IMG/VR virus record: IMGVR_UViG_3300042923_000474
Location: 62,001-126,000 of that record
Direction: 5' to 3' (one strand)
Length of the DNA stretch: 64,000 nt
The notes under the pieces are model-generated. The model worked only from the letters and a program-made list of their open reading frames with translations. It was not told where the DNA came from and made no database searches. This document shows positions 18,619 through 40,956 of this stretch, one piece after another (position 1 is the stretch's first letter; each line of letters opens with the position of its first letter). The translations under genes were made by a program, and so were the position numbers.

Positions 18619-19270
18619 TTTGGGTCCAGACATCAAACGTCTGTCCCCGCTTACAGACGAGCAGCTTAAAGGCCTTATCGCCTACGCTGACTCGCACACG
18701 ATGTTCCCTGGCAACTTTCCACACATGGGCATCAATGGCCGCGACAATGTCTCGGTCTATCTGCAACACTCGATGTACAAGCAACCGATCCGTGACCGTA
18801 AGGCGCTGCGTGAATTCATGCCGAGCCTGCATGAGAAGGCGATCTTGGAATACTTCTTGGAGTATCCAGCCAAGCGTGGTCACCTTGACCTGCAGACGTA
18901 CTGGATCGGTAAGCGTCCGGCCATGCGCATTGCAGCCTGGTGCCTGTCTGAAGAGGCCACCTTCTACAACTGCCGCAACATTACCAACCCAGCTTTCTCC
19001 ATGGATGAAACCATTCCAGTGGGTGACGTGGTGGCCGATGCCGACCGCATTGAGTTGGTGACGCTGGAGAATGCTGAGTATTGGGCGAACCGTGATGACA
19101 TCATTCGTCAGAACGCGCCGACTGAACATGTCTTCAAGCAAGGCGAAGGTTTCGTTTTCAACTTGAACAACGCGCACGCCGTGCTCAAGCAATCCACCAC
19201 TCAACGCTGGTTCTGCTTGGGGCTGATGATGGCTCCCGACAGTGTCCACGCACCCAAGTCATGGATCTAA
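18605..19270 (+). CDS. Divergent 2OG-Fe(II) dioxygenase/cupin-like protein
   Basis: GHLD (HxD), FKQGEGFVFNLNNAHAV (distal H), QRWF; about 50-aa insertion relative to the flanking paralogues. Confidence 0.55.
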   Translation: MIKDNLGPDIKRLSPLTDEQLKGLIAYADSHTMFPGNFPHMGINGRDNVSVYLQHSMYKQPIRDRKALREFMPSLHEKAILEYFLEYPAKRGHLDLQTYWIGKRPAMRIAAWCLSEEATFYNCRNITNPAFSMDETIPVGDVVADADRIELVTLENAEYWANRDDIIRQNAPTEHVFKQGEGFVFNLNNAHAVLKQSTTQRWFCLGLMMAPDSVHAPKSWI

Positions 19271-20534: not shown

Positions 20535-23500
20535 ATGGCCGCTTACAACGTCTGGTTCGATAAAGAACCTGGCCGCTATACCAGTCCCCAGACCATTGGC
20601 TGGACTGTGTCTGATCAGGTTGACTTCTTTGCCATCTCGCAAGGTGACCTCCCGGCTGCTATTTCCGAGTACATCGCTTACGACACCCTGACCCCACCGA
20701 ACCCTTTCATCGCGGTAACGCAGGACGGTACAGGTAACGTCGTTTATGATGGCGGCTTCCCCAAGTTCATGAATGCGTCAGCTCCACCGGCTGGGATCAA
20801 TGCTTCGATCACTATGGAGTTCCGGGCTACCTGTACGGGCGTAGCTGCTGGTGTCAATGCCTTCTACTACAACGCATTCACCGATCTGGCATGTCTGATT
20901 GCAGCGGGTGACAAGCTCGTGTACGACATGTGGCAGAACAACAGCCTTGCCCGAGCAGGTATTGACGGGGTTACCTCCCTGACCCCACCGGACCCACACT
21001 ACTCATTGCGAGATTGGGAAGGCGGATACATCGTTGACCAGAACGGACTGGCCTCCCATCCTGCAACAGATCTGGGTGGTCGAGCCACTAACCAGTGGTA
21101 TCACCGTGAGTTCGACCTGACTCGCTGTGCAGGCTTCACGTTCAATCGTTGGTCGATGGCCTTCGAAGGCGAGTCTGCGGGCGACTTTGCTTGCCGCTTC
21201 CGTGACGTCTATATCTTGGACAGCGCCGGTCGTATTAAGTACACGTTGTTTAAGGATTCCATGCGTCTGCCGGGGAATTCCTCAACTGAAGTAGGGGCGA
21301 GTGGCTACACCAATCTGGTCAAGCAGCTTTACGACCCACGGGCTCAGTTAGCAGGTTCCTACAAGTACCTGTTCAACGCCGTGCATTTTTGCTCCAACAC
21401 CAAGAAGAACGCGGCGGGTAACAAGAAGATTCTGATCTTGGGTGACCACACCAATGCATCTTCTACCTATGCGGTTAAGAGCACTGACCCTAGTGGCTTC
21501 TTTACCAGCATGACCAACCTGTGTGCGGCGCTCGGCTACACGCCAACGTTCAAGGACTTGGGTGATTATGGTGGCACCCAACTGAATCCAACACTGGCTG
21601 AGTTGGAGCAGTACAGTCTGGTGTTGATGTTCTCTACGGCCTACCACCAGCAGAACGCTCCACTGATTACTCCGGCAGCTGTGGATGCGTTTGTGGCGTA
21701 TCGTTCGGCGGGTAGCGGCATTATCCTGATCACCGACCATGGCAGTGCCGTGATTACCGACATCGCCCAAGTCAACCAACAGGTGGCTACATCGGCGGGC
21801 TTCTACGGTACCTGTAACCGGATTGCCACGCGTTTCGGTGCATGGTTCACTGGTAACTTTGACCGCTCTCCGGTTAACGTAGGTTTCCTGCGTTCGACGT
21901 ATGGCGAGCATCCTCTCTGGGCGGGGCTGGCCAACGATGAAAGTATCATTGCCGGGGGCTCTGAATCCAAGGTAATGATCAGTCCCTTCACCAAGTACAC
22001 CAAGACCTCCCTGCCTCCGGCGATCTCACTGCAGACGCCGCAGCGTAAAGTGGTTCAGGTAACGGCCAAGCTGAAGAACGGTGAGGCTGAAACCTTCCGA
22101 GTGGTGTTCATCTACGGTGACGGTTCGCTGATTAAGTGGACGGCTGACGGCAGCACCGAAGTGACCAGCGTCGACATCAAGTGGGCATGGACCATGTTCC
22201 TCGATCTGAAGTTCGACACGGCAGGATTAGGTACGCTGACAGGTTCCATTTACAAGAACACCACCAAGATCGGCGAGATCCTTTCGTCCGACGACGGCGA
22301 TGTTAAGGTAACCTGGTATTCGGGTGCCGTCTCCAACCACACCTTCTTGAATGGGGATGTGTTGCGGGCGGCTCTGGAAAACCCAATCAGTGCTTCTGCC
22401 AGTGTGGCGATCAGTCGCTGGAACTTGGAACAACTCAAGGGGCGTTCCAAAGCAGAGATTGCTCAGCTGATCAGTCACAAGTACGGGGCTGACACCGTAG
22501 CGGGTCCAGAAGCCAAGTTCCCACAGCGAGCCATTCGTGCTGCGGGGCGTGGTGTTCGTTCCATCTTGCCGAAGGATGCCATCATTGATGGTTACGGTAA
22601 GGTGCTGGACTGGGTGAGTGCAGGTCAGATCATCCGCATGCTCAAGGAGTTCGCCAAGGGTAACTTCCCACGGGTTCCGCTGAACGTTCTACTGTACGAG
22701 GACCAAGCGAAAGCCAACGTGGCCATGGCCAACTTCACCCCACCCACGCCTAAGCAGATCTTCGACACATGGGGTCGCTTCTCGAATCAGGAATGGTACG
22801 AGCCTGGGGTTGTTCCGCCTGCTGGTTCTGAGGCGGCTGGCTGGTCGTGGGATGCAGCTTCCAACAGTGCCAAGTCCACGGTCAACTCTGCGAGCACGAT
22901 TGGTTTTGTGTCCAAAGAGAAGGTAGAGGAATACATCCACGATGTGACCTTCACCTCCAGCAATGCTGACGACGATTCCATCTGCGTGGTGATTGCTGCT
23001 GCGAAGACGGGTAATCTGGTTGAGCACTTGACGTTGGTGGCAAGCCCTGGTGGTTACGGCACTGCACCGATCATGTTGGTGTACAACCTCGCTACAACGG
23101 GTGCCAAAACACTGGTAGAGCGTAACGTCATTGCGTTCGGTACACCTAACAGTGGGCTGACGCCATGGAGCGGTCGATCCATCCGGGTTAACATCAACCG
23201 TCGTGGGTCAAGCGTTACCATCGGCTACACGAACTGGAACGACCCATTGGGCCCGATCGTGGATACCTTCACGTTCGACATGACCAGCGAACCTTTACTG
23301 CACAACCTCTTGGGGCCACAGCAGTACGGCTACGGTGCCATGTCTCAACCTGATGTGACGTTCAAGAACATCCAGTTCTATGGCGGGGTGATGCTGCAGA
23401 CACTGACCGTAGCTTCGACGGGTGCGGTGTATCGTTGGAACGGTTCGGCTTGGGCTCCGGTAAACGGGGTTAAGTTGAAGGATGTGTACGGGACGCAGCG

Positions 23501-24014
23501 TAAGTTGATCTCGTACCTGACAACGCAAGAGTTCTACATCGACAAGAATGGGGTGGTGACTAAACTGACCGACCCTGCTCCCATGTTGTTGTCCCCTCTG
23601 GTGAACTCCGCCTTCAAGAACCCTGTAACCAATGCGGTGTTGTCGCCACAGTACAAGGTTTACTCGGCCAGCTACGGGTGGCAATCTCTGCCGGCTAACC
23701 TGACGATGTATTACTACGCGGACATGTACTTCCCAGCGGGAGACTACTGGTTCATCGGTGCTGCGGATGATCAGTTGACTGTCGAGATTGATGGGGTGGT
23801 GTATGGAAATCTGGGTGGTGGTTATGTAGAAGGAGCCGCTGTTCAGAAATTCAAAGTCACACTCACTGCAGGTACACACAAGTTGAAACTGACTAACGTG
23901 AACGTCCCTGCTGGTACGCCTGGGTATTGGTACATGTTGATCCTCAACAGTGCAGGTGCCATATTCCACGAGCCTACTCCGGGCACTTGGAAAACACTCG
24001 ACGCAATCGGGTAA
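20535..24014 (+). CDS. Large modular virion/tail-associated protein (1159 aa) with lectin-like and PA14-like domains
   Basis: Gly/Ser/Thr/aromatic-rich; beta-sandwich-like segment SSNADDDSICVV; C-terminal FIGAADDQLTVEIDG...GTHKLKL PA14-like pattern. Confidence 0.6.
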   Translation: MAAYNVWFDKEPGRYTSPQTIGWTVSDQVDFFAISQGDLPAAISEYIAYDTLTPPNPFIAVTQDGTGNVVYDGGFPKFMNASAPPAGINASITMEFRATCTGVAAGVNAFYYNAFTDLACLIAAGDKLVYDMWQNNSLARAGIDGVTSLTPPDPHYSLRDWEGGYIVDQNGLASHPATDLGGRATNQWYHREFDLTRCAGFTFNRWSMAFEGESAGDFACRFRDVYILDSAGRIKYTLFKDSMRLPGNSSTEVGASGYTNLVKQLYDPRAQLAGSYKYLFNAVHFCSNTKKNAAGNKKILILGDHTNASSTYAVKSTDPSGFFTSMTNLCAALGYTPTFKDLGDYGGTQLNPTLAELEQYSLVLMFSTAYHQQNAPLITPAAVDAFVAYRSAGSGIILITDHGSAVITDIAQVNQQVATSAGFYGTCNRIATRFGAWFTGNFDRSPVNVGFLRSTYGEHPLWAGLANDESIIAGGSESKVMISPFTKYTKTSLPPAISLQTPQRKVVQVTAKLKNGEAETFRVVFIYGDGSLIKWTADGSTEVTSVDIKWAWTMFLDLKFDTAGLGTLTGSIYKNTTKIGEILSSDDGDVKVTWYSGAVSNHTFLNGDVLRAALENPISASASVAISRWNLEQLKGRSKAEIAQLISHKYGADTVAGPEAKFPQRAIRAAGRGVRSILPKDAIIDGYGKVLDWVSAGQIIRMLKEFAKGNFPRVPLNVLLYEDQAKANVAMANFTPPTPKQIFDTWGRFSNQEWYEPGVVPPAGSEAAGWSWDAASNSAKSTVNSASTIGFVSKEKVEEYIHDVTFTSSNADDDSICVVIAAAKTGNLVEHLTLVASPGGYGTAPIMLVYNLATTGAKTLVERNVIAFGTPNSGLTPWSGRSIRVNINRRGSSVTIGYTNWNDPLGPIVDTFTFDMTSEPLLHNLLGPQQYGYGAMSQPDVTFKNIQFYGGVMLQTLTVASTGAVYRWNGSAWAPVNGVKLKDVYGTQRKLISYLTTQEFYIDKNGVVTKLTDPAPMLLSPLVNSAFKNPVTNAVLSPQYKVYSASYGWQSLPANLTMYYYADMYFPAGDYWFIGAADDQLTVEIDGVVYGNLGGGYVEGAAVQKFKVTLTAGTHKLKLTNVNVPAGTPGYWYMLILNSAGAIFHEPTPGTWKTLDAIG

Positions 24015-27404: not shown

Positions 27405-27434
27405 CGATTTAACTGATTTTCAAACCTACATTAC
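27405..27434 (+). promoter_or_regulatory. Putative early (virion RNAP) promoter
   Basis: CGATTTAACT-N6-CAAACCTACATTAC; near copy at 30445-30474; ends in a TATTAC-like core as recalled for phiKZ early promoters. Confidence 0.7.
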
Positions 27435-27488
27435 CAACATGAAGCGCGTCAATAAGCTTCTTCATTATCCACAGAAAGGAGTCTAGTT

Positions 27489-27975: not shown

Positions 27976-28818
27976 ATGAATCGTCGTATCTTACCTGCGG
28001 TGCTTATCATTGCGGGGGTTGTGGGGTTGGTCACTGTCTGGTTGGAGGTGATGTCTTCTGGCGTCGTGCCACGCTGGTCGGCCTTTACCTTCCCCATCGG
28101 CTGGGTGTTGTTTGCCATTCTGCTCATTTCGATCAACCGCACCATGACCGTCAAGGACGATCTGATCGCCCGGAAACAGGCGACCAATGATCGACTGACT
28201 GAACAGTGCCGACTGACGCAGACGAATGTCGAGAATCTGGAACGTCAGGTTAGCGGCATACAGGACCAACTGCGTTCGGCGCAACATGCCCACTCCATGG
28301 TGTCGCTGGATCTGGCTACTCAGAAGTTGTTTGTTCGTCGCCTGAACGGCATCTGTGCGGACAACGGCATTGACACCCGTGCAGCCAACGTCCCACCTGC
28401 TGAAGCTGGACGTGAACTGAACAGCAGTCGTGTGGCCCGCGAGAACCCAGTAGCACCACCACCGGTGCCGCAATCTTTGCGTGGCCAAGTGGTCTCTCAG
28501 CGTCGTTCCATGTCTTCGCCTAATCCATCCAGTTCGCCTGTCATCCGTGACACCGACAATGGTGGTTTCGACGGTCTCATGGCCGGTGTGCTGATCGGGT
28601 CGATGCTGAGTGACGATTCTTCGGCGTCGCCACGTCGTGAGCCTGAACCAACCCGTTGCGAACCAGCCCCGACTTATTCGGAGCCTGTCCGTAGCGAACC
28701 GTCTTATTGTGAACCCACCCGCAGTTCAGGTGGCGACAGTTGGGGCGGTAACAGTTCCTCGTCCGAGTCGTCTTCCTCATCGGGTGATTCCGGTGGCGGT
28801 AGTGGCGGCGGCGATTAA
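27976..28818 (+). CDS. Membrane-anchored coiled-coil protein with a Ser/Gly-rich tail
   Basis: Two N-terminal TM helices, coiled coil, GGFDGLMAGVLIGSML, low-complexity C-terminus. Confidence 0.75.
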   Translation: MNRRILPAVLIIAGVVGLVTVWLEVMSSGVVPRWSAFTFPIGWVLFAILLISINRTMTVKDDLIARKQATNDRLTEQCRLTQTNVENLERQVSGIQDQLRSAQHAHSMVSLDLATQKLFVRRLNGICADNGIDTRAANVPPAEAGRELNSSRVARENPVAPPPVPQSLRGQVVSQRRSMSSPNPSSSPVIRDTDNGGFDGLMAGVLIGSMLSDDSSASPRREPEPTRCEPAPTYSEPVRSEPSYCEPTRSSGGDSWGGNSSSSESSSSSGDSGGGSGGGD

Positions 28819-28825
28819 CCCTCTT

Positions 28826-28855
28826 GCCCCCGGCCAAGTGCCGGGGGCTTTATAC
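28826..28855 (+). terminator. Hairpin followed by TTTATAC (variant motif)
   Basis: GCCCCCGGC-CAAGT-GCCGGGGGC. Confidence 0.55.
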
Positions 28856-28873
28856 CCACGTTCTAAGGAGAAC
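28855..28873 (+). promoter_or_regulatory. RBS-sequestering hairpin element 1
   Basis: CCCAC-GTTCT-AAGG-AGAAC, 3 nt before ATG 28877. Confidence 0.65.
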
Positions 28874-28876
28874 ACA

Positions 28877-29638
28877 ATGTCCTCAACTTTTCCAGGTGCA
28901 ACTCGTCCTAGTCGTGAAGCAGACGATTGCCCATGTCAATACGACGACTGCACTGAAGTGGCCACGCAGGAATACTGCACTGAAGTGGACAGCATGGGCG
29001 GTGAGTGGCTGCCCCTGTGCGATGAGCACATCGTGCAGTTCAAAGAAGATGTAGCCAATGCCAATGCCATCTCTGACGGTGAGTGTGATTGGTGTAAAGC
29101 AAGAGATGTGCAGGTAGCCCCCTTCCGTGACTGGCAGGAAGGCACTCAGGGACCCGTGTACGAGGTTTGCGAGACTTGCCGCGGCAAGAGTATAGATGAG
29201 GCCAACAAGCTGGCAGACAACGTCCCAGAGGACGAGGAGGATATCAATGGCGACGTTGATACTTTCGCGCAGATGCCAGAGCTGGACGATGACGCCATCG
29301 GTGAGATGTTCTTTGCCCCAGGCGTTGGACGCAGTGCTGATTACGACTGTGATGAACTGAACCTGTTCAAGCATTCGAACATTGGTGAACCCATTCGGTC
29401 TGACCACCACTTCAACCTCAATGGTCCGATGCTGGTAGATGGTCAACTGGGTTTCTCTGCACACTTCCAGGACGGCATCCACTTTGTGATTGCGCTGGAT
29501 CTGGATCTGGGGATGATGTTCTGGGGGGTTAGTTTTGATAACCCGCTTTACTTCATCGCCATCGGCCCTCGTGTTAATCGCATTCGTCTTCGCCTAGCCG
29601 CCCTTGGCTACCGCGTACTTGACACTGAAGAACTTTAA
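28877..29638 (+). CDS. Cys-rich, acidic putative Zn-binding protein
   Basis: CPCQYDDC, LCDEH, CDWC, CETC motifs. Confidence 0.7.
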   Translation: MSSTFPGATRPSREADDCPCQYDDCTEVATQEYCTEVDSMGGEWLPLCDEHIVQFKEDVANANAISDGECDWCKARDVQVAPFRDWQEGTQGPVYEVCETCRGKSIDEANKLADNVPEDEEDINGDVDTFAQMPELDDDAIGEMFFAPGVGRSADYDCDELNLFKHSNIGEPIRSDHHFNLNGPMLVDGQLGFSAHFQDGIHFVIALDLDLGMMFWGVSFDNPLYFIAIGPRVNRIRLRLAALGYRVLDTEEL

Positions 29639-29648
29639 GGATAGTCCC

Positions 29649-30452
29649 ATGACTACTGCAAACCCGCTCCAAGACAAACTGCGTTCGTTGTTCCTGCTGT
29701 GCGACTATGCCAACATCAGTTCTAACGATCACCGTGACTGCTACAGTACGGCTGAGGAGGAGATCAAGAAACGCAATCCTAAAGTCAGCGAAGACATCCT
29801 GGCTGGGATGATCGAAAGCAACGTGTGGCACGAGATCACCATCCACCCAGTGGGCGCTCGTAGCCGCATGTCCTTCATCGGCCATGACTTCATCTCTACG
29901 TTGAACGATGCGTTCGCCATGGCGGTGATGTTCTCCAAGGAAGCCTGTCCTGAAGGGGATGACATTATCCTTACTGATGAAGAGGATAACGCCACCCTCA
30001 ACTACGTCAAGCTGAGCAATACTTGCCGTGCGTCTGTTGGACTTACCTTCAACGGCTGGCGGGATGATCAGGTGAGCACGCAGGACGGTCCCCAAGAGGC
30101 GACTGCCGAGAACCACCTGCGTAACCACATCGAGTGGGAAGACGATGAGGAGTGCACCGAGTACCTGACCGAGGAGTTGATTGCTGCAATGTGTGAGCCA
30201 GGCTCTGAGTCTGTCTTCTACATCCACGCTTACCCCAACACCCCTGTCGGCAGCTACAGCTTCTATGGTCTGAACTCTCATCAGGTCATCAAGGCCATGC
30301 TGCAGATCTGCACAGAAGCCACCCAGTTCGATGCTCCCCAGCCAGCCGGCATGAACATTGAGTTGTCTCGTGTGGCAGCAGAGCTGCGTCGTCAAGGCGC
30401 TGAACCGTCCGAATTCTGGACTAGCCGTGAAAAGCCAAACGATTCGATTTAA
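29649..30452 (+). CDS. Hypothetical protein with a tandemly duplicated domain
   Basis: ND HRD..STAEE..K...VSEDILAGMIE..ITIHP echoed by NGWRD..TAE..L...LTEELIAAMCE..IHAYPNTPVG. Confidence 0.7.
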   Translation: MTTANPLQDKLRSLFLLCDYANISSNDHRDCYSTAEEEIKKRNPKVSEDILAGMIESNVWHEITIHPVGARSRMSFIGHDFISTLNDAFAMAVMFSKEACPEGDDIILTDEEDNATLNYVKLSNTCRASVGLTFNGWRDDQVSTQDGPQEATAENHLRNHIEWEDDEECTEYLTEELIAAMCEPGSESVFYIHAYPNTPVGSYSFYGLNSHQVIKAMLQICTEATQFDAPQPAGMNIELSRVAAELRRQGAEPSEFWTSREKPNDSI

Positions 30453-30474
30453 CTAAAAATCGAACCTATAATAC
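30445..30474 (+). promoter_or_regulatory. Putative early promoter, copy 2
   Basis: CGATTTAACT-AAAAAT-CGAACCTATAATAC. Confidence 0.7.
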
Positions 30475-30516
30475 CCACGTGAATAAGGTTGAATAAACTT
30501 CCTTGTTCACATCAAT

Positions 30517-30536
30517 CCCCATGTTCTAAGGAGAAC
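30517..30536 (+). promoter_or_regulatory. RBS-sequestering hairpin element 2
   Basis: CCCCAT-GTTCT-AAGG-AGAAC before ATG 30540. Confidence 0.65.
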
Positions 30537-30539
30537 AAA

Positions 30540-30875
30540 ATGGAAACTTACTTCATCGTTTCTGGCGTTATCGCCAATGCTGTTGTTATCGCTGCTGCCC
30601 TGCTGTGGATCGTCTACTGGGTGATCCTGCGTAAAGGTGTGGATGTACGAGAGGTAGGCGTTATGAACGCCGAAGTGAAGGAAGGCGATGACTGGGTTGA
30701 GGTGGTTGAAGAGGGCGGAGTGGTTAAGCACTATATCCTGACCTTCACGGCTATCCGTCACCGTTACTACTCCATCTGGTCCATGCGCCGTCAGATCTGG
30801 AAGTCTGTAAAGCGCATGCATCCAAACGTCAGAGCTGTTAGCGTGGAAGGCTTCGCTTACGGTTTCGACGACTAA
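30540..30875 (+). CDS. Single-pass membrane protein, paralogue of 30911-31222
   Basis: N-terminal TM; IWKSVKR...VRAV...GFAYGF. Confidence 0.75.
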   Translation: METYFIVSGVIANAVVIAAALLWIVYWVILRKGVDVREVGVMNAEVKEGDDWVEVVEEGGVVKHYILTFTAIRHRYYSIWSMRRQIWKSVKRMHPNVRAVSVEGFAYGFDD

Positions 30876-30884
30876 TCAACCTAT

Positions 30885-30904
30885 CCCCAAGTCCTAAGGA
30901 GGAC
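30885..30904 (+). promoter_or_regulatory. RBS-sequestering hairpin element 3
   Basis: CCCCAA-GTCCT-AAGG-AGGAC before ATG 30911 (compensatory C-G pair). Confidence 0.65.
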
Positions 30905-30910
30905 ACTGTA

Positions 30911-31222
30911 ATGACCGCTATCATCGTTATCGCTGTACTGGCTGCAATCGTACTGACTGTTGTTGTAGCACGTCGTATGCGTCACCATGGCTTCACCTTG
31001 CAAGAGGTATCCATCTATCAAGAAGCTGCCTCTCAAAAGGCTGACAACTTCGTAGAGATCACTGTTGCTGGCTGCCGTCTGCGCAAGCCACTGGCTGTAG
31101 AGGTTGAACTGGAACGCCGGTTCAATCCAGAGAAACTGCGTGAAGCCATCTGGCGGAGCGTTAAGCGTTACGATGATCGTGTGAGCGCTGTGCGTTTCCA
31201 AGGTCACACCTACTCGTTCTAA
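30911..31222 (+). CDS. Single-pass membrane protein, paralogue of 30540-30875
   Basis: N-terminal TM; IWRSVKR...VSAV...GHTYSF. Confidence 0.75.
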   Translation: MTAIIVIAVLAAIVLTVVVARRMRHHGFTLQEVSIYQEAASQKADNFVEITVAGCRLRKPLAVEVELERRFNPEKLREAIWRSVKRYDDRVSAVRFQGHTYSF

Positions 31223-31230
31223 AACTAAAC

Positions 31231-31264
31231 GGTCCGGCTCTCAGGTGAGGGTCGGACCTTATGC
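31231..31264 (+). terminator. Hairpin followed by TTATGC
   Basis: GGTCCGGCTCTC-AGGT-GAGGGTCGGACC. Confidence 0.7.
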
Positions 31265-31283
31265 CGACTAAAGGAGCAAGATA

Positions 31284-31556
31284 ATGGCATCTGTAAAAGT
31301 AATGGTAAACCGCGTAAACATCCTCGTCCTCCCTGACTTCCGTAAGGTGCTCAAGGAGTGGGAGAAGTTTGGCAACACCACCGGCGAACGTCTGGTGGGC
31401 ATCGTCGTCACCCCTTGGGATGGCGAGTACAACCTGGAAGAGGTCATGACTTCTTCTCGCTTCTCAATCCCCGGCTTGCAAGATGCAAAACGGGACCTCA
31501 TGGCGACTATCGCCGAATACGACAAGGTCACTATCAATGAACGTCGAATTGCTTGA
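31284..31556 (+). CDS. Hypothetical protein (90 aa)
   Basis: AAGGAG RBS. Confidence 0.7.
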   Translation: MASVKVMVNRVNILVLPDFRKVLKEWEKFGNTTGERLVGIVVTPWDGEYNLEEVMTSSRFSIPGLQDAKRDLMATIAEYDKVTINERRIA

Positions 31557-31557
31557 A

Positions 31558-31719
31558 ATGAATAACCTGATCCTCTCCATCGGTGCACGCCTGCGTCAAG
31601 TCTCCCTGAGTCTTGCACAGGCTACCGGCCACTGCCGTGAACTGCTTTCCGTTGAACGAGACGTCCTGCTTAACCAGTACACTTCACTCTGCAGCCGTAC
31701 CTCCACCCTGACCGCCTAA
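31558..31719 (+). CDS. Possible 53-aa protein
   Basis: ATG 1 nt after the upstream stop; MNNLILSIGARLRQVSLSLAQ... Confidence 0.45.
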   Translation: MNNLILSIGARLRQVSLSLAQATGHCRELLSVERDVLLNQYTSLCSRTSTLTA

Positions 31720-31766
31720 GCTTAGTCTTAAGCGCATTGGGTGGCAGTGCATTTAAGAGTGAACTT

Positions 31767-31786
31767 CCCCACGTCCTTAGGAGGAC
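31767..31786 (+). promoter_or_regulatory. RBS-sequestering hairpin element 4
   Basis: CCCCAC-GTCCT-TAGG-AGGAC before ATG 31793. Confidence 0.65.
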
Positions 31787-31792
31787 AACCCC

Positions 31793-32053
31793 ATGAGCGA
31801 ACAAAATGATCCACTCGATCAACTAACCCCTGAGAATCGCATCAAGTATGAAAACTACAAACGCGAAGATCAGTTAACCGCAGACCTGCTCCACGGCATT
31901 GTCGCCATGGCAAAGATGTTGCGTGGTCGTGACATCTTCGGCTTGGAAGGCAAGGGTGCTCTGGACTCTTTCCAACAGAGTGAAGACATTCAATGGCTGA
32001 TGGACCACACTGGCGTAGCCGGTTGGGATGACCCCATTGACCCAGCAGACTGA
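31793..32053 (+). CDS. Small acidic hypothetical protein (86 aa)
   Basis: Strong RBS; ends at a terminator. Confidence 0.75.
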   Translation: MSEQNDPLDQLTPENRIKYENYKREDQLTADLLHGIVAMAKMLRGRDIFGLEGKGALDSFQQSEDIQWLMDHTGVAGWDDPIDPAD

Positions 32054-32055
32054 CA

Positions 32056-32111
32056 GCATAACCGCCCTCCCATTACGGGAGGGCGGCTACCTGCTTGCTA
32101 TTTATTTTTTT
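32056..32111. terminator. Bidirectional hairpin terminator
   Basis: CCGCCCTCCC-ATTAC-GGGAGGGCGG; TATGC on the minus side, distal T-tract on the plus side. Confidence 0.75.
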
Positions 32112-32244
32112 GTTTCTGAACACGATCACTGATCTTGCTCAAGGCGATCCCCGCAACAATTTCACGGATAGCCTGACGACCCTGGCACATTTGCTGACTG
32201 GTCATGATGGGTACGCGCTCTGCCACTGCTTGCATGTTCGATCC

Positions 32245-32718
32245 TTACTTGATCTTGGAAAGCACCATGGAGATGAATTCCTCTAGGGATTTGGCGATGA
32301 TCTGCCGTTTAGGTTTACCGGTGCGGAAAAGGATGATCTGACCCCGTCGCCCACCGGCTGCTGGCGCTTGGTCAATGCAGTAATAGTCTGCCCCATTGAT
32401 TTTGGCAAACGGAATCCACGCAGGGTTCCACCAGGTAGCTGCGACCCCAGAGTCCGGCACAGCTTTCTTGTCGTCGGTCTTGCCATCGGTGTAGGTCTCG
32501 TTGAAACCTTTCCAGAGGGTCAACACCTTCTGATGAGGCAGGAATACAATCTTGCCCCCTTCAGTCTTGATGGACATCCCGTTGGATTGTTCCAGCGCAG
32601 AGCGCAGGTCCTTGGGCATGTCGATCTTTGCTTTCTGTTCGTTCGCATCGGCCTTGGCCTTATCGAGTTCAGGTCCCTTTTTTACACCTTCCGGCAGGGA
32701 TGACAAGTTAACGGCCAT
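32245..32718 (-). CDS. SMI1/KNR4 (SUKH) family immunity-like protein
   Basis: MPKDLRSALEQSNG, WWNPAWIPFA, DYYCIDQAP..GG..GQIILF, IAKSLEEFI. Confidence 0.85.
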   Translation of the reverse strand: MAVNLSSLPEGVKKGPELDKAKADANEQKAKIDMPKDLRSALEQSNGMSIKTEGGKIVFLPHQKVLTLWKGFNETYTDGKTDDKKAVPDSGVAATWWNPAWIPFAKINGADYYCIDQAPAAGGRRGQIILFRTGKPKRQIIAKSLEEFISMVLSKIK

Positions 32719-33154
32719 TGCGAGGCTCCTGATTGATTTGCTCTATATAGTTCAACCAGTTGGTGAGGAAGTCACGAGCCTTATCGTGATTGCCCACTGT
32801 CTTACCGGTCTGACGACCCGCTACAAAAGCTGCACGAGACAGTTCACGAATGCCATGGTAGGCTTGCTCTTTACGACGCAGGCTTTCCCAGTCCAGACGT
32901 TTGTCGATGCCGTGCAGATGGGAACGGATGTGGAAGGTGATCATGTTTGCACGGTGGCCACCAATGGGTTCCGGCAACTCTACAGCTTCCAGCTTTTCCA
33001 ACTCCTGACCCGCCACGTGATCGGCGTAGATCTCCTTGTGCATCTGTTCATGCATGTCCATGCCGCGTTGCTCTTCTGGAGTCAGCGGCTTCTGAAGATC
33101 TGACTGATAAGTGAAATCAGACATCAGACCTGCATTGAAGGGTGACGATCGCAT
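32708..33154 (-). CDS. Hypothetical protein with an isolated terminase-type Walker A peptide (GRQTGKT)
   Basis: GGAG RBS; AFVAGRQTGKT encoded at 32798-32818. Confidence 0.7.
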   Translation of the reverse strand: MRSSPFNAGLMSDFTYQSDLQKPLTPEEQRGMDMHEQMHKEIYADHVAGQELEKLEAVELPEPIGGHRANMITFHIRSHLHGIDKRLDWESLRRKEQAYHGIRELSRAAFVAGRQTGKTVGNHDKARDFLTNWLNYIEQINQEPRNGR

Positions 33155-33926: not shown

Positions 33927-34625
33927 TTAACGTGGTTGCCTGAAAGATTGCTTGGATCTGTGGCGTATTACTGAGCCCCGCATCTTCTTGGTACGGTTCT
34001 GCCGCTTACGGTTGCGCAGGATGTCCAGCGTGACCATTTGCAACAGTACATCACAGATGAGGTTGTGTGCAGCATCCGCGCGCTCTGGAGACATCCCTAC
34101 GACGTACTGTTGCATGGTGTCTGCATCCATCACAATGTCGCCCGGCAGTGGACCATCAGGACGACCCAACGCATCACCACCGTGCCACATCGGAGGAACC
34201 TTGACGTTGCGCAGGGGTTCTGGGATGTCGACAACGACGGGGCCAAAGGCATTTAAGAAGGTGGGTTCAAAGTCCGGCGTAGATTTTCTTTCACCACGCA
34301 ACATTGTTTGAACACTGGGTTGCAGGTGACTGTCGCACAGGCCGAAGCTTAAAACGTCTTCGCCTTTACCTAGGCCATTGACCAAACCGACCTCGGAGAT
34401 AACTGCGTAGGCTTGACCTTTGTGCTGGGTCATGTTCACCTCGTAGACCTTACCGTTAGACAACTCCAACGGTGCCTGGATGATGTCTAACAGCTCCTTT
34501 GGGAACTCGTAGAGGTGCCGGGCAATACCTGTCTTCTCCTCGACAGGTTCAGCAACCTTCGGAGCGTCACCTATCCGGGTGATCTCCATGGCGGTTATGT
34601 CGCACAGCTTATTGCCTTTTTCCAT
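33927..34625 (-). CDS. Hypothetical protein with an Arg/Lys-rich C-terminus
   Basis: Start moved to ATG 34625; overlap-coupled. Confidence 0.65.
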   Translation of the reverse strand: MEKGNKLCDITAMEITRIGDAPKVAEPVEEKTGIARHLYEFPKELLDIIQAPLELSNGKVYEVNMTQHKGQAYAVISEVGLVNGLGKGEDVLSFGLCDSHLQPSVQTMLRGERKSTPDFEPTFLNAFGPVVVDIPEPLRNVKVPPMWHGGDALGRPDGPLPGDIVMDADTMQQYVVGMSPERADAAHNLICDVLLQMVTLDILRNRKRQNRTKKMRGSVIRHRSKQSFRQPR

Positions 34626-35220
34626 GATTGATATCTCGAATGGCTTGTTGTAAAGGTGGGAGGATCTCTTGTTGAGGTCCCATGTAATCGCAATGGCCGA
34701 TAGTTCCCACATTGACAATGGGTTTCTTCAGCCCGGCCAGAGGATCTTCGTACATACCACCCCACGCCTTGTACGAGACGGTGTAGCGATCACGCCATGG
34801 CTCGATAGCGATCACGTTGGCAGCGATCATGTAGCGAGTCATGGCCTCTGCATCACGCAGGTGCACGATGTGGTCATGGAGAGGATCTGCCAGCGGCCCA
34901 CCGAACATGGGTTCCATGCTGCACTTGGTGTGCCCGGTGTAATACAAGATGCGCTCATTGGGATCACGCTCGTCTACGACCCGCCTGGTCCTTAGGTCGT
35001 AACCACGCGCACGATAAACCGAGTGACGGTGTGCATTGGGTTCAACGACCGATTGGAGTGGAGAGTTCTCCAACATCTCCACATGGGCTGCATGGATTTT
35101 GGATTGGTAGAATTCATTGCGGGCTTTATGCCACTCGTCCATGGCTTGCTCGTGGGCCAATTCCCCTTTCTCAAAGAGGCGATGCCAGCTGCTCTTCTTG
35201 AAGCTTACAAAGGTATCCAT
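34609..35220 (-). CDS. Hypothetical protein with an EF-Tu-like peptide KPIVNVGTIGHCD
   Basis: 203 aa; motif encoded at 34687-34725. Confidence 0.7.
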   Translation of the reverse strand: MDTFVSFKKSSWHRLFEKGELAHEQAMDEWHKARNEFYQSKIHAAHVEMLENSPLQSVVEPNAHRHSVYRARGYDLRTRRVVDERDPNERILYYTGHTKCSMEPMFGGPLADPLHDHIVHLRDAEAMTRYMIAANVIAIEPWRDRYTVSYKAWGGMYEDPLAGLKKPIVNVGTIGHCDYMGPQQEILPPLQQAIRDINHGKRQ

Positions 35221-38121: not shown

Positions 38122-38411
38122 TACGAAATCTCGACGTCGGCCAGTTTCAGGAAGCGGTGGTACCAGTACGACCAGTTGTGACGGCATTCCAGACGAATGG
38201 CTTCACGCTGCTCTTCGGTAACATCCGGGCTGAAGGGGTCCAGCTCTTTCAGGGCAGGGTTGACGTAGTACAGGCCTTCCGGTACCTGGATGAGTTTAGA
38301 AGCAGCTGCACGCTGCTCCTGAGTCATCTCCTCGTAACGGCGAGCCAACTTGATGCTCTCATCGTTTTCGAGGAAGGTGGCGTCAAACTTAAATTCACTA
38401 TCGGTATTCAT
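38121..38411 (-). CDS. Stand-alone 96-aa protein resembling the N-terminus of phiKZ-like large terminase
   Basis: NDESIKLARRYEEM...NPALKELDPFSPDVTEEQREAIRLECRHNWSYW; TAATG-coupled to SbcC. Confidence 0.65.
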   Translation of the reverse strand: MNTDSEFKFDATFLENDESIKLARRYEEMTQEQRAAASKLIQVPEGLYYVNPALKELDPFSPDVTEEQREAIRLECRHNWSYWYHRFLKLADVEIS

Positions 38412-40891
38412 TAACTAATCTCCACATGCAGATTGGCGTCGGCTGGACGCGTGATATTTCGGTCATCCAATACCACGAACTCGGCTTGGTTAAATGAACC
38501 ATAGACCGACGAATAGTGACTGACCATGAACAACTGACTGAACCGACCCTGCTCCATCAGCGACTGAATGTAATTGACCAGACGCTCGCGGTGCTCATCG
38601 TCAAAGTCCTTACCGAACTCATCGGCCAGCAATGGGAAGTCGTGTAAACCTGTCAACTCCATCACCACCAACTTGAACACCCAGTCAATCATCGAGACCT
38701 GACCGGTAGACCCATCGGCAATATCGCCATCGGGGTTCGGTTGGTTGTTGACAATGATCGGGAGTTTCACGTTGAGGGTAGCGCCTTCCTCCAAGACCGC
38801 ATCAATCTCCATCGGGTACGTCCACACCATCGCAATGTGTTCGTTGATCATCCCAGTGAAGTGACGAATGAAGTTCTTGGTGATGTCTGCCACAATGCCA
38901 TGAGTAGGTGACAGGGCGCGAGCCAGTAACTTGTACGACGTGAAGCGAGACTCCACATCAATCAGCTCACTGCGAGAGTTCTCGTAACGGGCTTGTAGGT
39001 CACGGTAACGCTGGGTGGATTGGTGCAGGGTAGCCAGACGGGTCATCACCTTGCCACGCACCTGATCCAGATGCTCATCACGCAGTGCATCTTCCACTTG
39101 CTTACGCAGGGAGTTGAACGATTCAATGGCGTTGGACATCTCCATCATCAGAGTATCCAACTTCTCCAAGTGATAGAGTTCCTCACTGAGTTGGGCCATT
39201 GCGATCGTTGCCTGGTTCACCGCCTCGTACTTGTCGTGCAGCTCACCTTCGAGCAGGTCAGCACGCTGCAGCAGGAACTTAGGATCACCACTGTTCTTGA
39301 TCAGCTCCAGACGCGATGTGAGGTCCTTTAGCTCTGCAGTGATACGCTTGGCGTAAGCAGTGTCCAAAAGCTTTCTAATCGTGTCTGAGAGCGCCACAGA
39401 GATCATGGCAGGGTTAGTGCGTACATAACCTCGTTCACTCACCATCTCCCAGAAAGCAGACAACACTTTGGAGCCTTCACGAATACGAGCCAACTCACCG
39501 AGCTTACGGCTGTAGTCATCAAAGTCTGAGATGTGGACAGACAACTCCTCCATCTCCCGCTGAGCCTGCTCCACCTTTTGACGACGACTGTCCAACCGCG
39601 CCTGAGTTTGCTCAACCAACCCAGCAGGCCAGCCCGGCTTGAAGGTGTGTTCACACTTAGGGCAGTTGGTATCAGCGGTGTGGGTCGCATGTTCCAGCGT
39701 CGCCTCCATCTTGGAGATGACGTTGTTGGATTCAATGCACCACTGACTGAGTTTGGTGTAGCGCTCCATCCTTTCAGAGTGAGTACCACGAGCGTACAGT
39801 CCTTCGGTGTTGGCAGGGATCGTGACGCACAGTTCAGTCAGTTGCTGCTGGATACCTTCCGCTACGGCCAGCAACGCTTCAGGAGACTCGCTACCGCATT
39901 CGTAGAGACTGCCTTGAGCTTGGATACCCGCCAGCTCTTCTTCGATCTGTGCAACGCGTGTAGTGAGCTGAGAAGGATCGTCCAAAGACTCACGACCTAC
40001 GTGACGGATCAGCGACTGGATACCTTCCAGTGCTTTCTCATGGGTGTCACACTCCCCACGGGTCTTCATCATCCGATCACGCAGCGAGGAGATCTCGCCA
40101 TCCACCTGCTCTTTGGTCTTGCCACCGTACTTGGAGTTGTCACGAATGACCGTCTCCGCCACGATGGTTTGAGAGCGCTGGTGAATGGTCTTGTACGCGT
40201 CCTGCATGCGCTTGATCAGACCACTGGAATCGGCTACCGACATTCGGCCATTCAAAGCGTGGTTGAGTTCAATGCCCAACTGCTTGAGTTGAGTGACCTC
40301 ATCATCCGTGTCCTTGAAGTCATCCTCCATAGAACGGATCTCATCGGACATGTCATGTGTCAGGTCCAGCAGGTACTTCATCGTACCCTGCATGTCACGG
40401 GCTTTGACACGAAACTGTTCGAACAGACCCAACACGTAATCAAAGTCAGTCCCTGAGATACGCATCATCCACTCACGGCGTTTGGAGGGACTCATCTGAG
40501 ACAGGCGTGCTCGTCCTGTCAGAATGTCACTCACCTCTTGGGTCAACCCCACGTAACGCTCTACCAACTCTTTCTGAGTGGCCTGAGTGTTGCCGTCGTT
40601 CAGCTGAACACCGTTCATGTTAAAGGTGTGGTGACCGGCCTTAACGTTATAGACGCTGATCAGGTTGAAGTTTGAATCGTTGTGTTCGAAGAAGTATTCG
40701 ACACCACCACCTTTGTGGAAACGGCTACCGTTAGGCACAAGGTTCAGAATCGCTTGTAGCAAAGAACTTTTACCTGCCCCGTTACTGCCCAGCACAATTT
40801 GTTCCTGTGACTGCGGCGTATATTCGAAGCGCCAAATACCCGCTAGGTCAAAAGACTTGTAGCCGGTTAGGATGATTTTGAGAAGACGCAT
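38411..40891 (-). CDS. sbcC: SbcC/Rad50-like SMC ATPase
   Basis: Walker A GSNGAGKS, coiled coils, central CPKC zinc hook, signature GSTGQ, Walker B LLADE, H-loop MVSH. Confidence 0.92.
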   Translation of the reverse strand: MRLLKIILTGYKSFDLAGIWRFEYTPQSQEQIVLGSNGAGKSSLLQAILNLVPNGSRFHKGGGVEYFFEHNDSNFNLISVYNVKAGHHTFNMNGVQLNDGNTQATQKELVERYVGLTQEVSDILTGRARLSQMSPSKRREWMMRISGTDFDYVLGLFEQFRVKARDMQGTMKYLLDLTHDMSDEIRSMEDDFKDTDDEVTQLKQLGIELNHALNGRMSVADSSGLIKRMQDAYKTIHQRSQTIVAETVIRDNSKYGGKTKEQVDGEISSLRDRMMKTRGECDTHEKALEGIQSLIRHVGRESLDDPSQLTTRVAQIEEELAGIQAQGSLYECGSESPEALLAVAEGIQQQLTELCVTIPANTEGLYARGTHSERMERYTKLSQWCIESNNVISKMEATLEHATHTADTNCPKCEHTFKPGWPAGLVEQTQARLDSRRQKVEQAQREMEELSVHISDFDDYSRKLGELARIREGSKVLSAFWEMVSERGYVRTNPAMISVALSDTIRKLLDTAYAKRITAELKDLTSRLELIKNSGDPKFLLQRADLLEGELHDKYEAVNQATIAMAQLSEELYHLEKLDTLMMEMSNAIESFNSLRKQVEDALRDEHLDQVRGKVMTRLATLHQSTQRYRDLQARYENSRSELIDVESRFTSYKLLARALSPTHGIVADITKNFIRHFTGMINEHIAMVWTYPMEIDAVLEEGATLNVKLPIIVNNQPNPDGDIADGSTGQVSMIDWVFKLVVMELTGLHDFPLLADEFGKDFDDEHRERLVNYIQSLMEQGRFSQLFMVSHYSSVYGSFNQAEFVVLDDRNITRPADANLHVEIS

Positions 40892-40956
40892 GGGTAGGCT
40901 TTCCGTATTCGTAGGCATTCGCTAATAAGTGCCCCCAATCTGTTAGGAGATACACG

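What the first reader, a model, noticed from the sequence alone, without database searches (positions are those of the whole stretch)
28855..31786. Four covarying hairpins that sequester the Shine-Dalgarno of early accessory genes
Seen: CCC(C)AN-GT[T/C]CT-[A/T]AGG-AG[A/G]AC at 28855, 30517, 30885 and 31767, 3-6 nt before ATGs. The T-A to C-G change covaries, so structure is conserved, and AGGAG spans the loop and 3' arm. Not noticed before core late genes. Knowledge: GGA-loop hairpins at the RBS are bound by CsrA/RsmA, though the loop register here differs from the canonical ANGGA. Inference: a translational regulon read by RsmA-like or phage proteins, or a tag for mRNA processing or export.
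Basis: partly seen in the sequence, partly recalled or inferred. Interest (0 to 1): 0.68.

Follow-up and report, generated by a model that had tools for sequence, protein, structure and literature searches.

The report
Hairpin-wrapped ribosome sites, jumbo-phage early genes
A soil jumbo phage of the nucleus-forming kind, and its uncultured relatives, wrap the ribosome-binding site of a subset of early accessory genes in one small RNA hairpin whose stem changes only by compensating mutations, so it is a real, selected translation-start signal whose reader is still unknown.

Summary
The four sites are exact. They belong to a family of 10 in this 231.7-kb phage genome and about 70 across nine related uncultured jumbo-phage contigs. 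All lie on the coding strand, 2-7 nt before a start codon.

The geometry is fixed: a 5-bp stem and an NAGG loop, with AGGAG spanning the loop and the 3' arm. The stem sequence varies (about 16 versions) and is always Watson-Crick complementary, including compensatory changes between orthologous genes.

The phage encodes a chimallin homologue and phage RNA-polymerase subunits. An AT-rich promoter-like box, present 18 times and always on the + strand (once before chimallin), marks presumed early operons. Of the 39 hairpins, 34 lie downstream of such a box. Core genes, chimallin included, lack the hairpin.

The hairpins are weak (-0.6 to -6.2 kcal/mol), so they cannot switch translation off alone. 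I read the element as a translational operator or structured ribosome-binding site of accessory early genes, probably with a common reader. The host CsrA/RsmA and export-tag readings are poorly supported. Gene gains, losses and swaps break at the motif.

The closest analogue is the start-associated sequence of Cluster K mycobacteriophages, whose function is also unknown. This is a new variant of a known kind.

The parts
28855..28873 (+). Hairpin-SD element 1: CCCAC box, stem GTTCT/AGAAC, loop AAGG. ATG at 28877.
   Evidence: 32.5 bits
30518..30536 (+). Hairpin-SD element 2: CCCAT box, stem GTTCT/AGAAC, loop AAGG. ATG at 30540. It starts 60 nt after an early-type promoter box.
   Evidence: (33.8 bits)
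30886..30904 (+). Hairpin-SD element 3: CCCAA box, stem GTCCT/AGGAC, loop AAGG. ATG at 30911.
   Evidence: (34.6 bits)
31768..31786 (+). Hairpin-SD element 4: CCCAC box, stem GTCCT/AGGAC, loop TAGG. ATG at 31793.
   Evidence: (30.7 bits)
28877..29638 (+). Gene served by element 1: 253-aa ORFan with a Cys-rich N-terminus (PHROG 15864, unknown function).
30540..30875 (+). Gene served by element 2: 111-aa ORFan with an N-terminal hydrophobic helix. It is a distant paralogue of the next gene.
30911..31222 (+). Gene served by element 3: 103-aa ORFan with an N-terminal hydrophobic helix.
31793..32053 (+). Gene served by element 4: 86-aa ORFan. The whole cassette (hairpin plus ORF) is missing in relatives (joint 31771 to 32056). 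A closer relative carries an unrelated ORF in its place.
30463..30483 (+). Early-type promoter-like box (AACCTATAATACC..GTGAA), one of 18 in the genome, all on the + strand.
   Evidence: description of jumbo-phage early promoters in PMC7598289
27423..27443 (+). Early-type promoter-like box heading the operon that runs into element 1 (1.4 kb upstream of it).
30479..30510 (+). Predicted stem-loop starting at the presumed transcript 5' end, directly after the promoter box.
   Evidence: 72-nt fold -21.6 kcal/mol, z = -4.2
28826..28848 (+). GC-rich terminator-like hairpin followed by TTTATA, directly upstream of element 1.
   Evidence: phiKZ terminator motif (hairpin plus TTAT) in 10.1101/2023.10.13.562163

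Best explanation
The element is an RNA stem-loop built into the ribosome-binding site of individual cistrons in transcripts from the phage's early-type promoters, presumably made by the virion RNA polymerase. The 5' arm (NNNCT) pairs with the last two bases of AGGAG plus the next three bases. This leaves (A/T/C)AGG in a 4-nt loop, 2-7 nt before the start codon. The loop, with the weak closing U-A pair, displays UAAGG, the complement of the 3'-terminal CCUUA of bacterial 16S rRNA (my knowledge of 16S). The rest of a very strong SD (up to TAAGGAGG) is held in the stem. I propose that it acts as a translational operator for a set of accessory early genes. On its own the weak stem only dampens initiation. 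The fixed geometry and the C-rich single-stranded 5' flank suggest a common reader, most likely a phage-encoded or virion-delivered hairpin-binding protein or endonuclease. Such a reader would shut these messages off (or on) together as infection proceeds, as coat protein does at the MS2 replicase operator and RegA/RegB do at T4 early ribosome-binding sites. Shown: the existence, position, strand bias and geometry of the element, its covariation, its association with promoter-box operons, and its weak predicted stability. Inferred: that the boxes are early promoters, that the element acts on translation, and that a trans-acting reader exists.
For: Position and strand: there are 10 sites in the genome, all on the + strand. 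Across four genomes, 39 of 40 perfect hairpins have a start codon 2-7 nt downstream, the + strand carries 40 and the - strand 1, and none occurs before - strand genes of G000.

Structure, tested without circular selection: of 202 genes with AGGAG 3-12 nt before the start, 36 have all 5 pairs, against 2.4 in shuffles. Of 27 unique arms carrying CT, 10 are fully complementary at the three free positions, where 1.6% per arm (about 0.4 arms) is expected by chance.

Geometry: only the class with a 5-bp stem, a 4-nt loop and the 3' arm starting at the second A of AGGAG is enriched (36 observed, 0.3 in shuffles). After setting aside 13 counts that are these same hairpins with a sixth outer pair, all other hairpin classes over the SD total 9, no more than the roughly 24 in shuffles for all classes.

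Covariation: three of the five pairs vary, always on both sides, and no single-sided change occurs among the 39 sites. There are about 16 stem versions in all. Orthologous genes show GTTCT/AGAAC against GATCT/AGATC, and GTCCT/AGGAC against ATCCT/AGGAT, while the spacers and flanks diverge.

Not explained by gene duplication: most of the products are unrelated ORFans, and the two paralogue pairs share only 27-35% identity while the motif is identical.

Early context: there are 16-18 + strand intergenic promoter-like boxes per complete genome, and one lies 75 nt before the chimallin homologue. Of 39 hairpins, 34 lie within 6 kb downstream of a box in an unbroken same-strand run, against 331 of 725 + strand genes. 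Eleven start 32-61 nt after a box.

Weak stems argue for a reader rather than autonomous occlusion: stabilities are -0.6 to -6.2 kcal/mol, and the median SD opening cost is 4.8 against 2.9 kcal/mol.

Repetition before each cistron fits control of translation or of the message at the ribosome-binding site.
Against: There are no transcript, ribosome or binding data for this phage or any relative. The sequencing runs that hold it are served only as assembled contigs, and the one labelled RNA-Seq is probably DNA. No candidate reader was identified: there is no RegB, CsrA or RelE/ParE homologue, and the PHROG 'ribonuclease' in the window has no supporting family or structure match. The earliest genes must be translated by naive host ribosomes, so an element that needs no factor is equally plausible. 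The uniform geometry could be inherited from one ancestral cassette end spread by recombination rather than imposed by a reader. The free variation of three stem pairs shows that any reader recognises shape, not sequence, there. The element is absent from the five characterised relatives tested, so it is not essential to this phage lifestyle.
Confidence: 0.42

Rival explanations
1. The hairpin works alone as a structured ribosome-binding site, with no dedicated reader. The loop gives the 16S rRNA 3' end a toehold. The short stem tempers a very strong SD, insulates it from neighbouring sequence and protects single-stranded GGAG from nucleases. Unrelated accessory cassettes therefore get a uniform, moderate, context-independent start signal from the first minute of infection.
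For: The stems are weak and the predicted extra opening cost is only about 2 kcal/mol. Stem sequence is free provided it pairs. The genes must be translated by unmodified host ribosomes. The element accompanies gene cassettes that are swapped between relatives, where a portable self-contained start signal would be useful. No reader gene was found.
Against: Pure thermodynamic tuning should tolerate many stem lengths, loop sizes and registers, yet only one geometry is enriched. Stability varies ten-fold (-0.6 to -6.2 kcal/mol), which is odd for a tuned throttle. The conserved C-rich 5' flank (ATYCCCAN in the G000 group, CCC..A in the G002 group) has no role in this model.
Confidence: 0.27
2. The hairpins are targets of a RegB-like, phage-induced endoribonuclease that cuts inside GGAG of early ribosome-binding sites and so ends early protein synthesis.
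For: The T4 RegB/S1 strong-site consensus is GGAGRAYARAA, located in SDs of early genes. [quoted passage not shown] Here GG lies in the loop and the following G in the stem. The first 8 nt of that consensus are matched by 9 of the 10 genomic sites, and site 2 (window 30530-30540) matches 11 of 11. The four commonest stems all give GGAG-R-A-Y.
Against: The genome has no RegB homologue (PF10715) and no RelE/ParE-type fold by sequence. RegB is inhibited by secondary structure. An A-rich spacer after GGAG is also what a good ribosome-binding site looks like, so the resemblance may be generic. Several stems (ATC, TAC, TCT, GGA, CGC after GGAG) do not fit RAY.
Confidence: 0.1
3. Host CsrA/RsmA binds the GGA-bearing hairpins and represses, or times, translation of these phage genes.
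For: CsrA/RsmA sites are short stem-loops with ANGGA in the loop that overlap SDs (10.1101/2020.08.24.265819). Sites with an AAGG loop contain AAGGA. GTCCT-type sites carry a second GGA.
Against: The A of GGA is paired, so the register is shifted by one relative to the CANGGAYG hexaloop. The first loop base is T or C in 10 of 39 aligned sites and in most of the G002-group sites found later, which removes ANGGA. The outer stem pairs are maintained although CsrA does not need them. The host is unknown. The phage has no CsrA gene.
Confidence: 0.07
4. The main role of the repeat is evolutionary. Like the PeSL cassettes of T4-type phages, it would be a shared junction at which accessory early genes are gained, lost and swapped by recombination. 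The hairpin would then be incidental to a conserved SD.
For: Relatives in three runs lack the element-4 cassette, with the joint at window 31771 (inside the box) and 32056 (3 nt after the stop codon). Homology between G000 and G001 runs through hairpin 4, the ORF is replaced, and homology resumes at the stop. G001 carries an extra 554-nt cassette bounded by two motif copies. PeSLs behave this way (PMC4122927).
Against: Recombination needs sequence identity, not pairing. It cannot explain compensatory double changes within orthologues, the 16 stem versions, or the fixed distance to start codons. This is better seen as a side effect of a functional repeat.
Confidence: 0.07
5. It is a DNA-level signal: a palindromic operator for a dimeric DNA-binding protein, a promoter for the non-virion RNA polymerase, or a DNA hairpin.
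For: The arms form an inverted repeat. An AT-containing flank (ATY before CCCA) precedes many sites in the G000 group. Promoters of the later RNA polymerase in these phages are poorly defined (PMC7598289).
Against: Sites within one genome differ by paired changes in both arms, which one protein reading two half-sites would not tolerate. The sites are strictly on one strand and at a fixed distance from start codons. The loop is asymmetric and is the SD itself. There is no TATG-type late-promoter core.
Confidence: 0.04

Closest known systems
Start-Associated Sequences (SAS) of Cluster K mycobacteriophages (Pope et al. 2011, PMC3203893)
   Same: Both are short asymmetric repeats containing AGGAG, flanked by symmetric outer bases (GGG...CCC in SAS). 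Both have 11-19 (SAS) or 10-15 (here) copies per genome, in one orientation, a few bases before start codons of non-structural genes of unrelated families. Both are absent from the host genome beyond chance. SAS was proposed to act in translation initiation, possibly through a host or phage factor, and its function was still untested in 2025.
   Different: The sequence and phage lineage differ (siphoviruses of Actinobacteria against a chimallivirus-like jumbo phage). In SAS the sequence itself is conserved, a 3-bp stem at most is possible, and no covariation has been reported. Here the stem sequence varies and pairing is what is conserved. The extended SAS inverted repeats have no counterpart here.
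Translational operator hairpins of RNA phages (MS2/PP7 coat protein at the replicase start) and T4 gp43/gp32 operators
   Same: A small hairpin of fixed shape overlaps the ribosome-binding site. In those systems a phage protein binds it to shut off translation at a set time.
   Different: Those operators serve one gene each. Here one shape serves 10-15 unrelated cistrons. No binding protein is known here.
T4 RegB (and RegA) control of early mRNAs
   Same: Post-transcriptional shut-off of many early genes acts through their ribosome-binding sites. The RegB site consensus GGAGRAYARAA resembles the 3' half of the element.
   Different: T4 sites have no conserved complementary 5' arm, and secondary structure inhibits RegB. 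This genome has no RegB homologue.
CsrA/RsmA-binding stem-loops
   Same: A short stem-loop with GGA overlaps the SD.
   Different: The register is shifted, the A of GGA is paired, and the first loop base is variable. The 5-bp stem is maintained by compensation.
PeSL cassettes of T4-type phages (PMC4122927)
   Same: Repeated regulatory motifs in regions rich in ORFans coincide with the breakpoints of gene insertions, deletions and replacements.
   Different: PeSLs are composite early-promoter plus terminator units acting as recombination junctions. The element here is a ribosome-binding-site hairpin, mostly without its own promoter.

Membership tests
CsrA/RsmA binding site | ANGGA (CANGGAYG) displayed in the apical loop of a short stem-loop | tested here: not met
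   The loop is NAGG, and the A of GGA is the first paired base of the 3' arm. The register is one base off the hexaloop consensus.
CsrA/RsmA binding site | Conserved A two bases before GGA | tested here: not met
   The first loop base is T or C in 10 of 39 aligned sites and in most of the further G002-group sites.
CsrA/RsmA binding site | Overlaps the SD or start of the regulated gene | tested here: met
   All sites lie 2-7 nt before a start codon.
CsrA/RsmA binding site | Bound by CsrA/RsmA | not testable with these tools
   The host is unknown. The phage has no CsrA gene.
Start-Associated Sequence (Cluster K mycobacteriophages) | Match to GGGATAGGAGCCC with at most 2 mismatches | tested here: not met
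   The consensus here is GTCCTAAGGAGGAC or GTTCTWAGGAGAAC. Only the AGGAG core is shared.
Start-Associated Sequence (Cluster K mycobacteriophages) | Multi-copy, one orientation, 3-7 nt before starts of non-structural genes of unrelated families | tested here: met
   This is a functional analogy, not sequence membership.
T4 RegB target | GGAG in an early-gene SD followed by RAYARAA | tested here: inconclusive
   GGAGRAYA is matched in 9 of 10 genomic sites and the full 11 nt in one. Minority stems do not fit.
T4 RegB target | Cognate RegB nuclease encoded by the phage | tested here: not met
   PF10715 gives no match in the complete genome.
PeSL (T4-type promoter-early stem-loop cassette) | Composite early promoter plus terminator-like stem-loop | tested here: not met
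   Only 2 of 10 sites have a promoter box nearby. The hairpin has no U-tract and sits in the ribosome-binding site.
PeSL (T4-type promoter-early stem-loop cassette) | Coincides with indel or replacement breakpoints between related phages | tested here: met
   covering three events.
Any Rfam family | Match to a curated covariance model | tested here: not met
   No hit at E <= 1 in window 28000-33000.
Chimallivirus-type (nucleus-forming, RNAP-encoding) jumbo phage, as context | Chimallin homologue, phage multisubunit RNAP subunits, phiKZ-like virion proteins | tested here: met
   The phiKZ gp54 homologue scores E = 7e-29. The RNAP beta-like gene scores E = 1.8e-147. A virion protein is 30-35% identical to those of phiKZ-like phages.

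The most novel reading that the evidence does not exclude
A clade of nucleus-forming jumbo phages carries a dedicated hairpin-reading factor that coordinately switches a portable set of accessory early genes at the level of their ribosome-binding sites. The factor could be an RNA-binding repressor or activator, a site-specific nuclease delivered in the virion or made early, or a modification of the ribosome. This would be a RegA/RegB-like layer not yet described for chimalliviruses, in which the operator travels with each gene cassette.
Probability: 0.3. Interest if true: 0.8.

Novelty: new variant of a known kind. Interest (0 to 1): 0.6.

Why it matters
Gene expression in nucleus-forming jumbo phages is understood mainly at the level of their two RNA polymerases. 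Almost nothing is known about how translation of their early messages is controlled, although those messages must work in an unprepared host within minutes. This element is compact, clearly selected for its structure, and marks which accessory early genes are handled together. It therefore gives a direct handle: a 14-nt bait for pull-downs and a simple set of compensatory mutants. It also offers a covariation-backed parallel to the mycobacteriophage start-associated sequences, unexplained since 2011, which suggests that wrapped ribosome-binding sites may be a recurrent phage device. The motif travels with gene cassettes, so it also bears on how ORFan genes are shuffled yet remain expressible. 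As a practical matter, it is a portable, insulated ribosome-binding site for phage engineering.

Tried and rejected
- Megablast of the region against GenBank phages found nothing.
- Rfam gave no hit.
- Sigma-70 promoter and intrinsic-terminator scans were at chance level.
- The genome has no homologue of RegB, CsrA or ParE/RelE.
- Pfam, PHROGs, NCBIfam and PDB sequence searches of the hairpin-gene products and neighbours found only unknown-function PHROGs and chance-level hits.
- The covariance model found nothing significant in phiKZ, Xoo-sp14, RSL2, Goslar or Psa21. Only this AGGAG-based model was tested, so other wrapped SDs in those phages are not excluded.
- A 14-mer scan of viral contigs was at chance density and useful only for spotting more jumbo relatives.
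- A 19-mer scan of 596 Gb of prokaryote genomes gave 4 chance-level hits and no host clue.
- The sequencing-run search found only contig-level holders. The one library labelled RNA-Seq is probably DNA, so transcript ends and expression could not be read.
- A literature search for the remembered phiKZ early-promoter string was uninformative. The early assignment rests instead on the general description in PMC7598289 and on the box before chimallin.
- Pairing of the CCCA box with the start codon works only for the CCCAT sites and was dropped.
- Translational coupling by a terminating ribosome was rejected. Stop codons lie up to about 18 nt before the stem, and sites next to a promoter have no upstream gene.
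- An RNA thermometer was rejected for lack of any of the known architectures.


Full report
**What the window is.** The window is bases 62001-126000 of a complete 231,724-bp virus record with direct terminal repeats and 53.9% G+C. A virion protein from the window matches phiKZ-like jumbo phages of Pseudomonas, Erwinia, Xanthomonas, Ralstonia and E. coli at 30-35% identity. The genome encodes a phage multisubunit RNA-polymerase beta-like subunit (E = 1.8e-147). It also encodes a homologue of the phiKZ nuclear-shell protein chimallin (E = 7e-29, genome 727-2763). It is therefore a distant, uncultured member of the RNA-polymerase-encoding, nucleus-forming type of jumbo phage. The runs that hold it are soil, leaf-litter, plant and wastewater samples.

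**The observation.** All four sites exist exactly as described. The 19-nt pattern gives 4 matches in the window against 0.27 expected. The whole genome has 10 such sites, all on the + strand, in two clusters: the window cluster and a second at genome 159.8-164.9 kb. Each sits 3-6 nt before the ATG of a predicted gene. Three sites have the stem GTTCT/AGAAC and seven have GTCCT/AGGAC, never mixed. No other complementary version of NNNCT-NAGG-AGNNN occurs in this genome.

**Relatives and covariation.** The pattern picked up related uncultured jumbo-phage contigs. A looser search, with N at stem position 3 and two mismatches allowed, returned further stems within the three related jumbo-phage records. 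Every two-mismatch hit that altered the stem did so by a compensatory pair: ATCCT/AGGAT, GATCT/AGATC and GTACT/AGTAC. No hit in those records had a one-sided stem change. One single hit in an unrelated 35-kb contig (G005) has a C-A mismatch and is likely chance.

I fetched three relatives whole, called genes with my own rough ORF caller and made a census that does not select for pairing. Of 202 genes with AGGAG 3-12 nt before the start, 36 have all five Watson-Crick pairs, against 2.4 in shuffles. The distribution is bimodal, with 0-3 pairs or 5. Among unique arm pairs that carry the inner CT, 10 of 27 are fully complementary at the three free positions, where 1.6% per arm is expected.

Only one geometry is enriched: a 5-bp stem, a 4-nt loop, and a 3' arm starting at the second A of AGGAG (36 observed, 0.3 in shuffles). 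Thirteen further counts are these same hairpins with a sixth outer pair. All remaining hairpin classes over the SD total 9, no more than the shuffled level.

On the 39-site alignment, three pairs vary and always on both sides. This alignment was selected for pairing, so it serves only as a description. A covariance model built from it finds four hits above 30 bits in the window, with the next at 13.7 bits. It finds 15, 15, 3, 4 and 1 hits in five further uncultured jumbo contigs. Within each contig all hits lie on one strand, and they add the stems GCTCT, AAGCT, GTGCT, CCTCT and AATCT.

Orthologous genes show compensatory evolution directly. The MAFKDY membrane protein has GTTCT/AGAAC in this genome and GATCT/AGATC in G001. 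The MSK..LTPENRN protein has GTCCT/AGGAC here and ATCCT/AGGAT in G003. The spacers and flanks of both have diverged. The products are mostly unrelated ORFans, so recent gene duplication does not explain the conservation. Paired changes among sites of one genome, strict strand bias and a fixed distance to start codons point to an RNA hairpin rather than a protein-binding DNA palindrome.

**Context.** About 45-60 nt upstream of two of the ten sites lies a box, AACCTATAATACC-N3-GTGAA. It belongs to a family of 18 intergenic boxes in this genome, all on the + strand, with similar families of 12-18 + strand boxes in the relatives (plus one weak - strand match each in three of them). This matches the published description of early promoters of RNA-polymerase-encoding jumbo phages: a phage-specific, roughly 10-nt AT-rich conserved sequence centred near -10, upstream of early operons (PMC7598289).

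One box lies 75 nt before the chimallin homologue. From memory, chimallin is among the earliest phiKZ genes. That these boxes are early promoters is an inference, because no transcript data exist.

Of the 39 hairpins, 34 lie within 6 kb downstream of a box in an unbroken same-strand run, against 331 of 725 + strand genes. Eleven start 32-61 nt after a box. In the G002 group, about half of the boxes are followed directly by a hairpin site. In this genome only 2 of 18 are, and chimallin and the structural genes are not. The element therefore marks a subset of accessory genes in presumed early operons, not early genes in general.

The predicted leader consists of a stable stem-loop starting at the presumed 5' end, a C-rich linker (ATYCCCAN in this group, CCC..A in the G002 group), the SD hairpin, and then the start codon.

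**Strength.** The stems are worth -0.6 to -6.2 kcal/mol at 37 C and about 2 kcal/mol more at 20 C. The predicted cost of freeing AGGAG has a median of 4.8 kcal/mol for the ten hairpin genes, against 2.9 for 50 other AGGAG genes, and it falls within the range of ordinary genes. The SD itself is as long as TAAGGAGG. The hairpin alone can therefore only dampen initiation, not sequester the site.

**Mechanism.** I favour a translational operator with a common reader, at about 0.4 (0.5 if a RegB-like nuclease is counted as such a reader). The reasons are the single fixed geometry, the free stem sequence, the conserved single-stranded C-rich flank, the weak intrinsic stability, and the repetition before each cistron.

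The main rival is an autonomous structured ribosome-binding site, at about 0.27. It would give swapped-in cassettes a uniform, insulated start signal. The loop plus the closing U reads UAAGG, the complement of the 16S 3' end (my knowledge of 16S).

A RegB-like nuclease is an attractive special case. The T4 site consensus GGAGRAYARAA and the preference for unpaired GGA with a constrained fourth G (PMC3014915) resemble the 3' half of the element. However, no RegB homologue exists in the genome, and secondary structure inhibits RegB.

Host CsrA/RsmA fits poorly. An export tag is unlikely for a signal that repeats within polycistronic units.

**Cassette behaviour.** Contigs of relatives in three runs lack the fourth window cassette. 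The joint runs from 31771, inside the CCCAC box, to 32056, 3 nt after the stop codon. Between this genome and G001, homology runs through hairpin 4. The ORF is then replaced (86 against 107 aa), and homology resumes at the stop. G001 also has an extra 554-nt cassette with its own hairpin between the orthologues of window genes 30540 and 30911. This recalls the PeSL-mediated shuffling of T4-type phages (PMC4122927). I regard it as a consequence of having a conserved repeat at each cassette head, not as the reason for the pairing.

**Comparison and novelty.** The closest described thing is the start-associated sequence of Cluster K mycobacteriophages. That element is a 13-bp AGGAG-containing repeat with symmetric ends, present in 11-19 copies, lying 3-7 bp before starts of non-structural genes, and its function is still untested (PMC3203893, PMC12699233). 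The present element differs in sequence and lineage. It also differs in that pairing rather than sequence is conserved, which supplies the structural evidence that SAS lacks.

It matches no Rfam family. It is absent, in this form, from five characterised relatives. I found no description of it in the literature searches. I rate it a new variant of a known kind, namely ribosome-binding-site hairpins and operators.

**Limits.** My gene calls come from a simple ORF and codon-score script and missed a few small genes. Promoter assignment is by motif only. All functional statements are inferences.

Noticed in passing
window 27423-27443, 30463-30483, 53692-53712 (+); 18 sites genome-wide: A family of intergenic, strictly + strand promoter-like boxes, roughly (t)YnRAACCTA-R-A-Y-TAYC-N-A-NN-TGAA. 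One lies 75 nt before the chimallin homologue. Related genomes carry their own versions, for example cagATCTATATTAC. They are probably the virion-RNA-polymerase early promoters of this clade.
   Followed up: partly
window 30479-30510 (+); also L009:4785-4815 and G002-group leaders (L062:8705-8730): A stable stem-loop begins right at the presumed transcript 5' end, using the TGAA(T) of the box. It is conserved as a structure in the relatives (TGAATAGGATAC...GTATCC). It could stabilise early mRNAs or be part of promoter recognition.
   Followed up: partly
window 28826-28853 (+); genome 160745-160777: GC-rich hairpins followed by TTTAT(A) sit just before some hairpin-SD sites. They resemble the phiKZ terminator motif (hairpin plus TTAT) described by ONT-cappable-seq.
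   Followed up: no
genome 52590-52640, 191006-191047, 207009-207054 (outside the window) and equivalents in G001: A second recurrent leader type follows early boxes: a C-rich stretch, then (T)AAAAGGAAT(T), 5-7 nt before ATG, with no hairpin. CCCCAA is also about 3-4 times enriched in the 40 nt before starts in G000, G001 and G003, but not in G002.
   Followed up: partly
window 31771-32056; genome 92878-92881 against G001 34603-35156: Whole-cassette presence/absence and replacement polymorphisms among relatives have breakpoints at the motif and at the stop codon.
   Followed up: yes
window 30540-30875, 30911-31222; L009:5802-6218, 8853-9050: Four of the ten hairpin-served genes encode small proteins with hydrophobic helices, one with about four. 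Two pairs are distant paralogues: 30540/30911, and 31793 with L009:4847-5731.
   Followed up: partly
L009:7956-8825 (genome 162956-163825): A 289-aa hairpin-served ORFan has a 28-residue match to a PHROG of phage RNA-polymerase beta subunits (E about 1e-5 to 1e-6). This may be a chance match or a shared motif.
   Followed up: no
window 45647-47302 (+): A 551-aa protein matches a PHROG annotated 'ribonuclease' (E = 4e-49) but has no Pfam, NCBIfam or PDB sequence match. If it is truly an RNase, it is one candidate reader of the hairpins.
   Followed up: partly
window 58987-63999 (-), 38411-40918 (-), 49143-50612 (+), 20535-24014 (+): Other content of the window: a giant tail-fibre/transglycosylase-like ORF that runs off the window end, an SbcC-like nuclease subunit, a UvsX-like recombinase, and a virion structural protein with beta-propeller-like repeats.
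   Followed up: no
G003 19186-19198 (flipped coordinates); G001 106345-106358: Natural loop variants exist at orthologous sites: a 3-nt loop (GTTCT-AGG-AGAAC) and an AGGG loop. These could serve as ready-made tests of the loop requirements.
   Followed up: no
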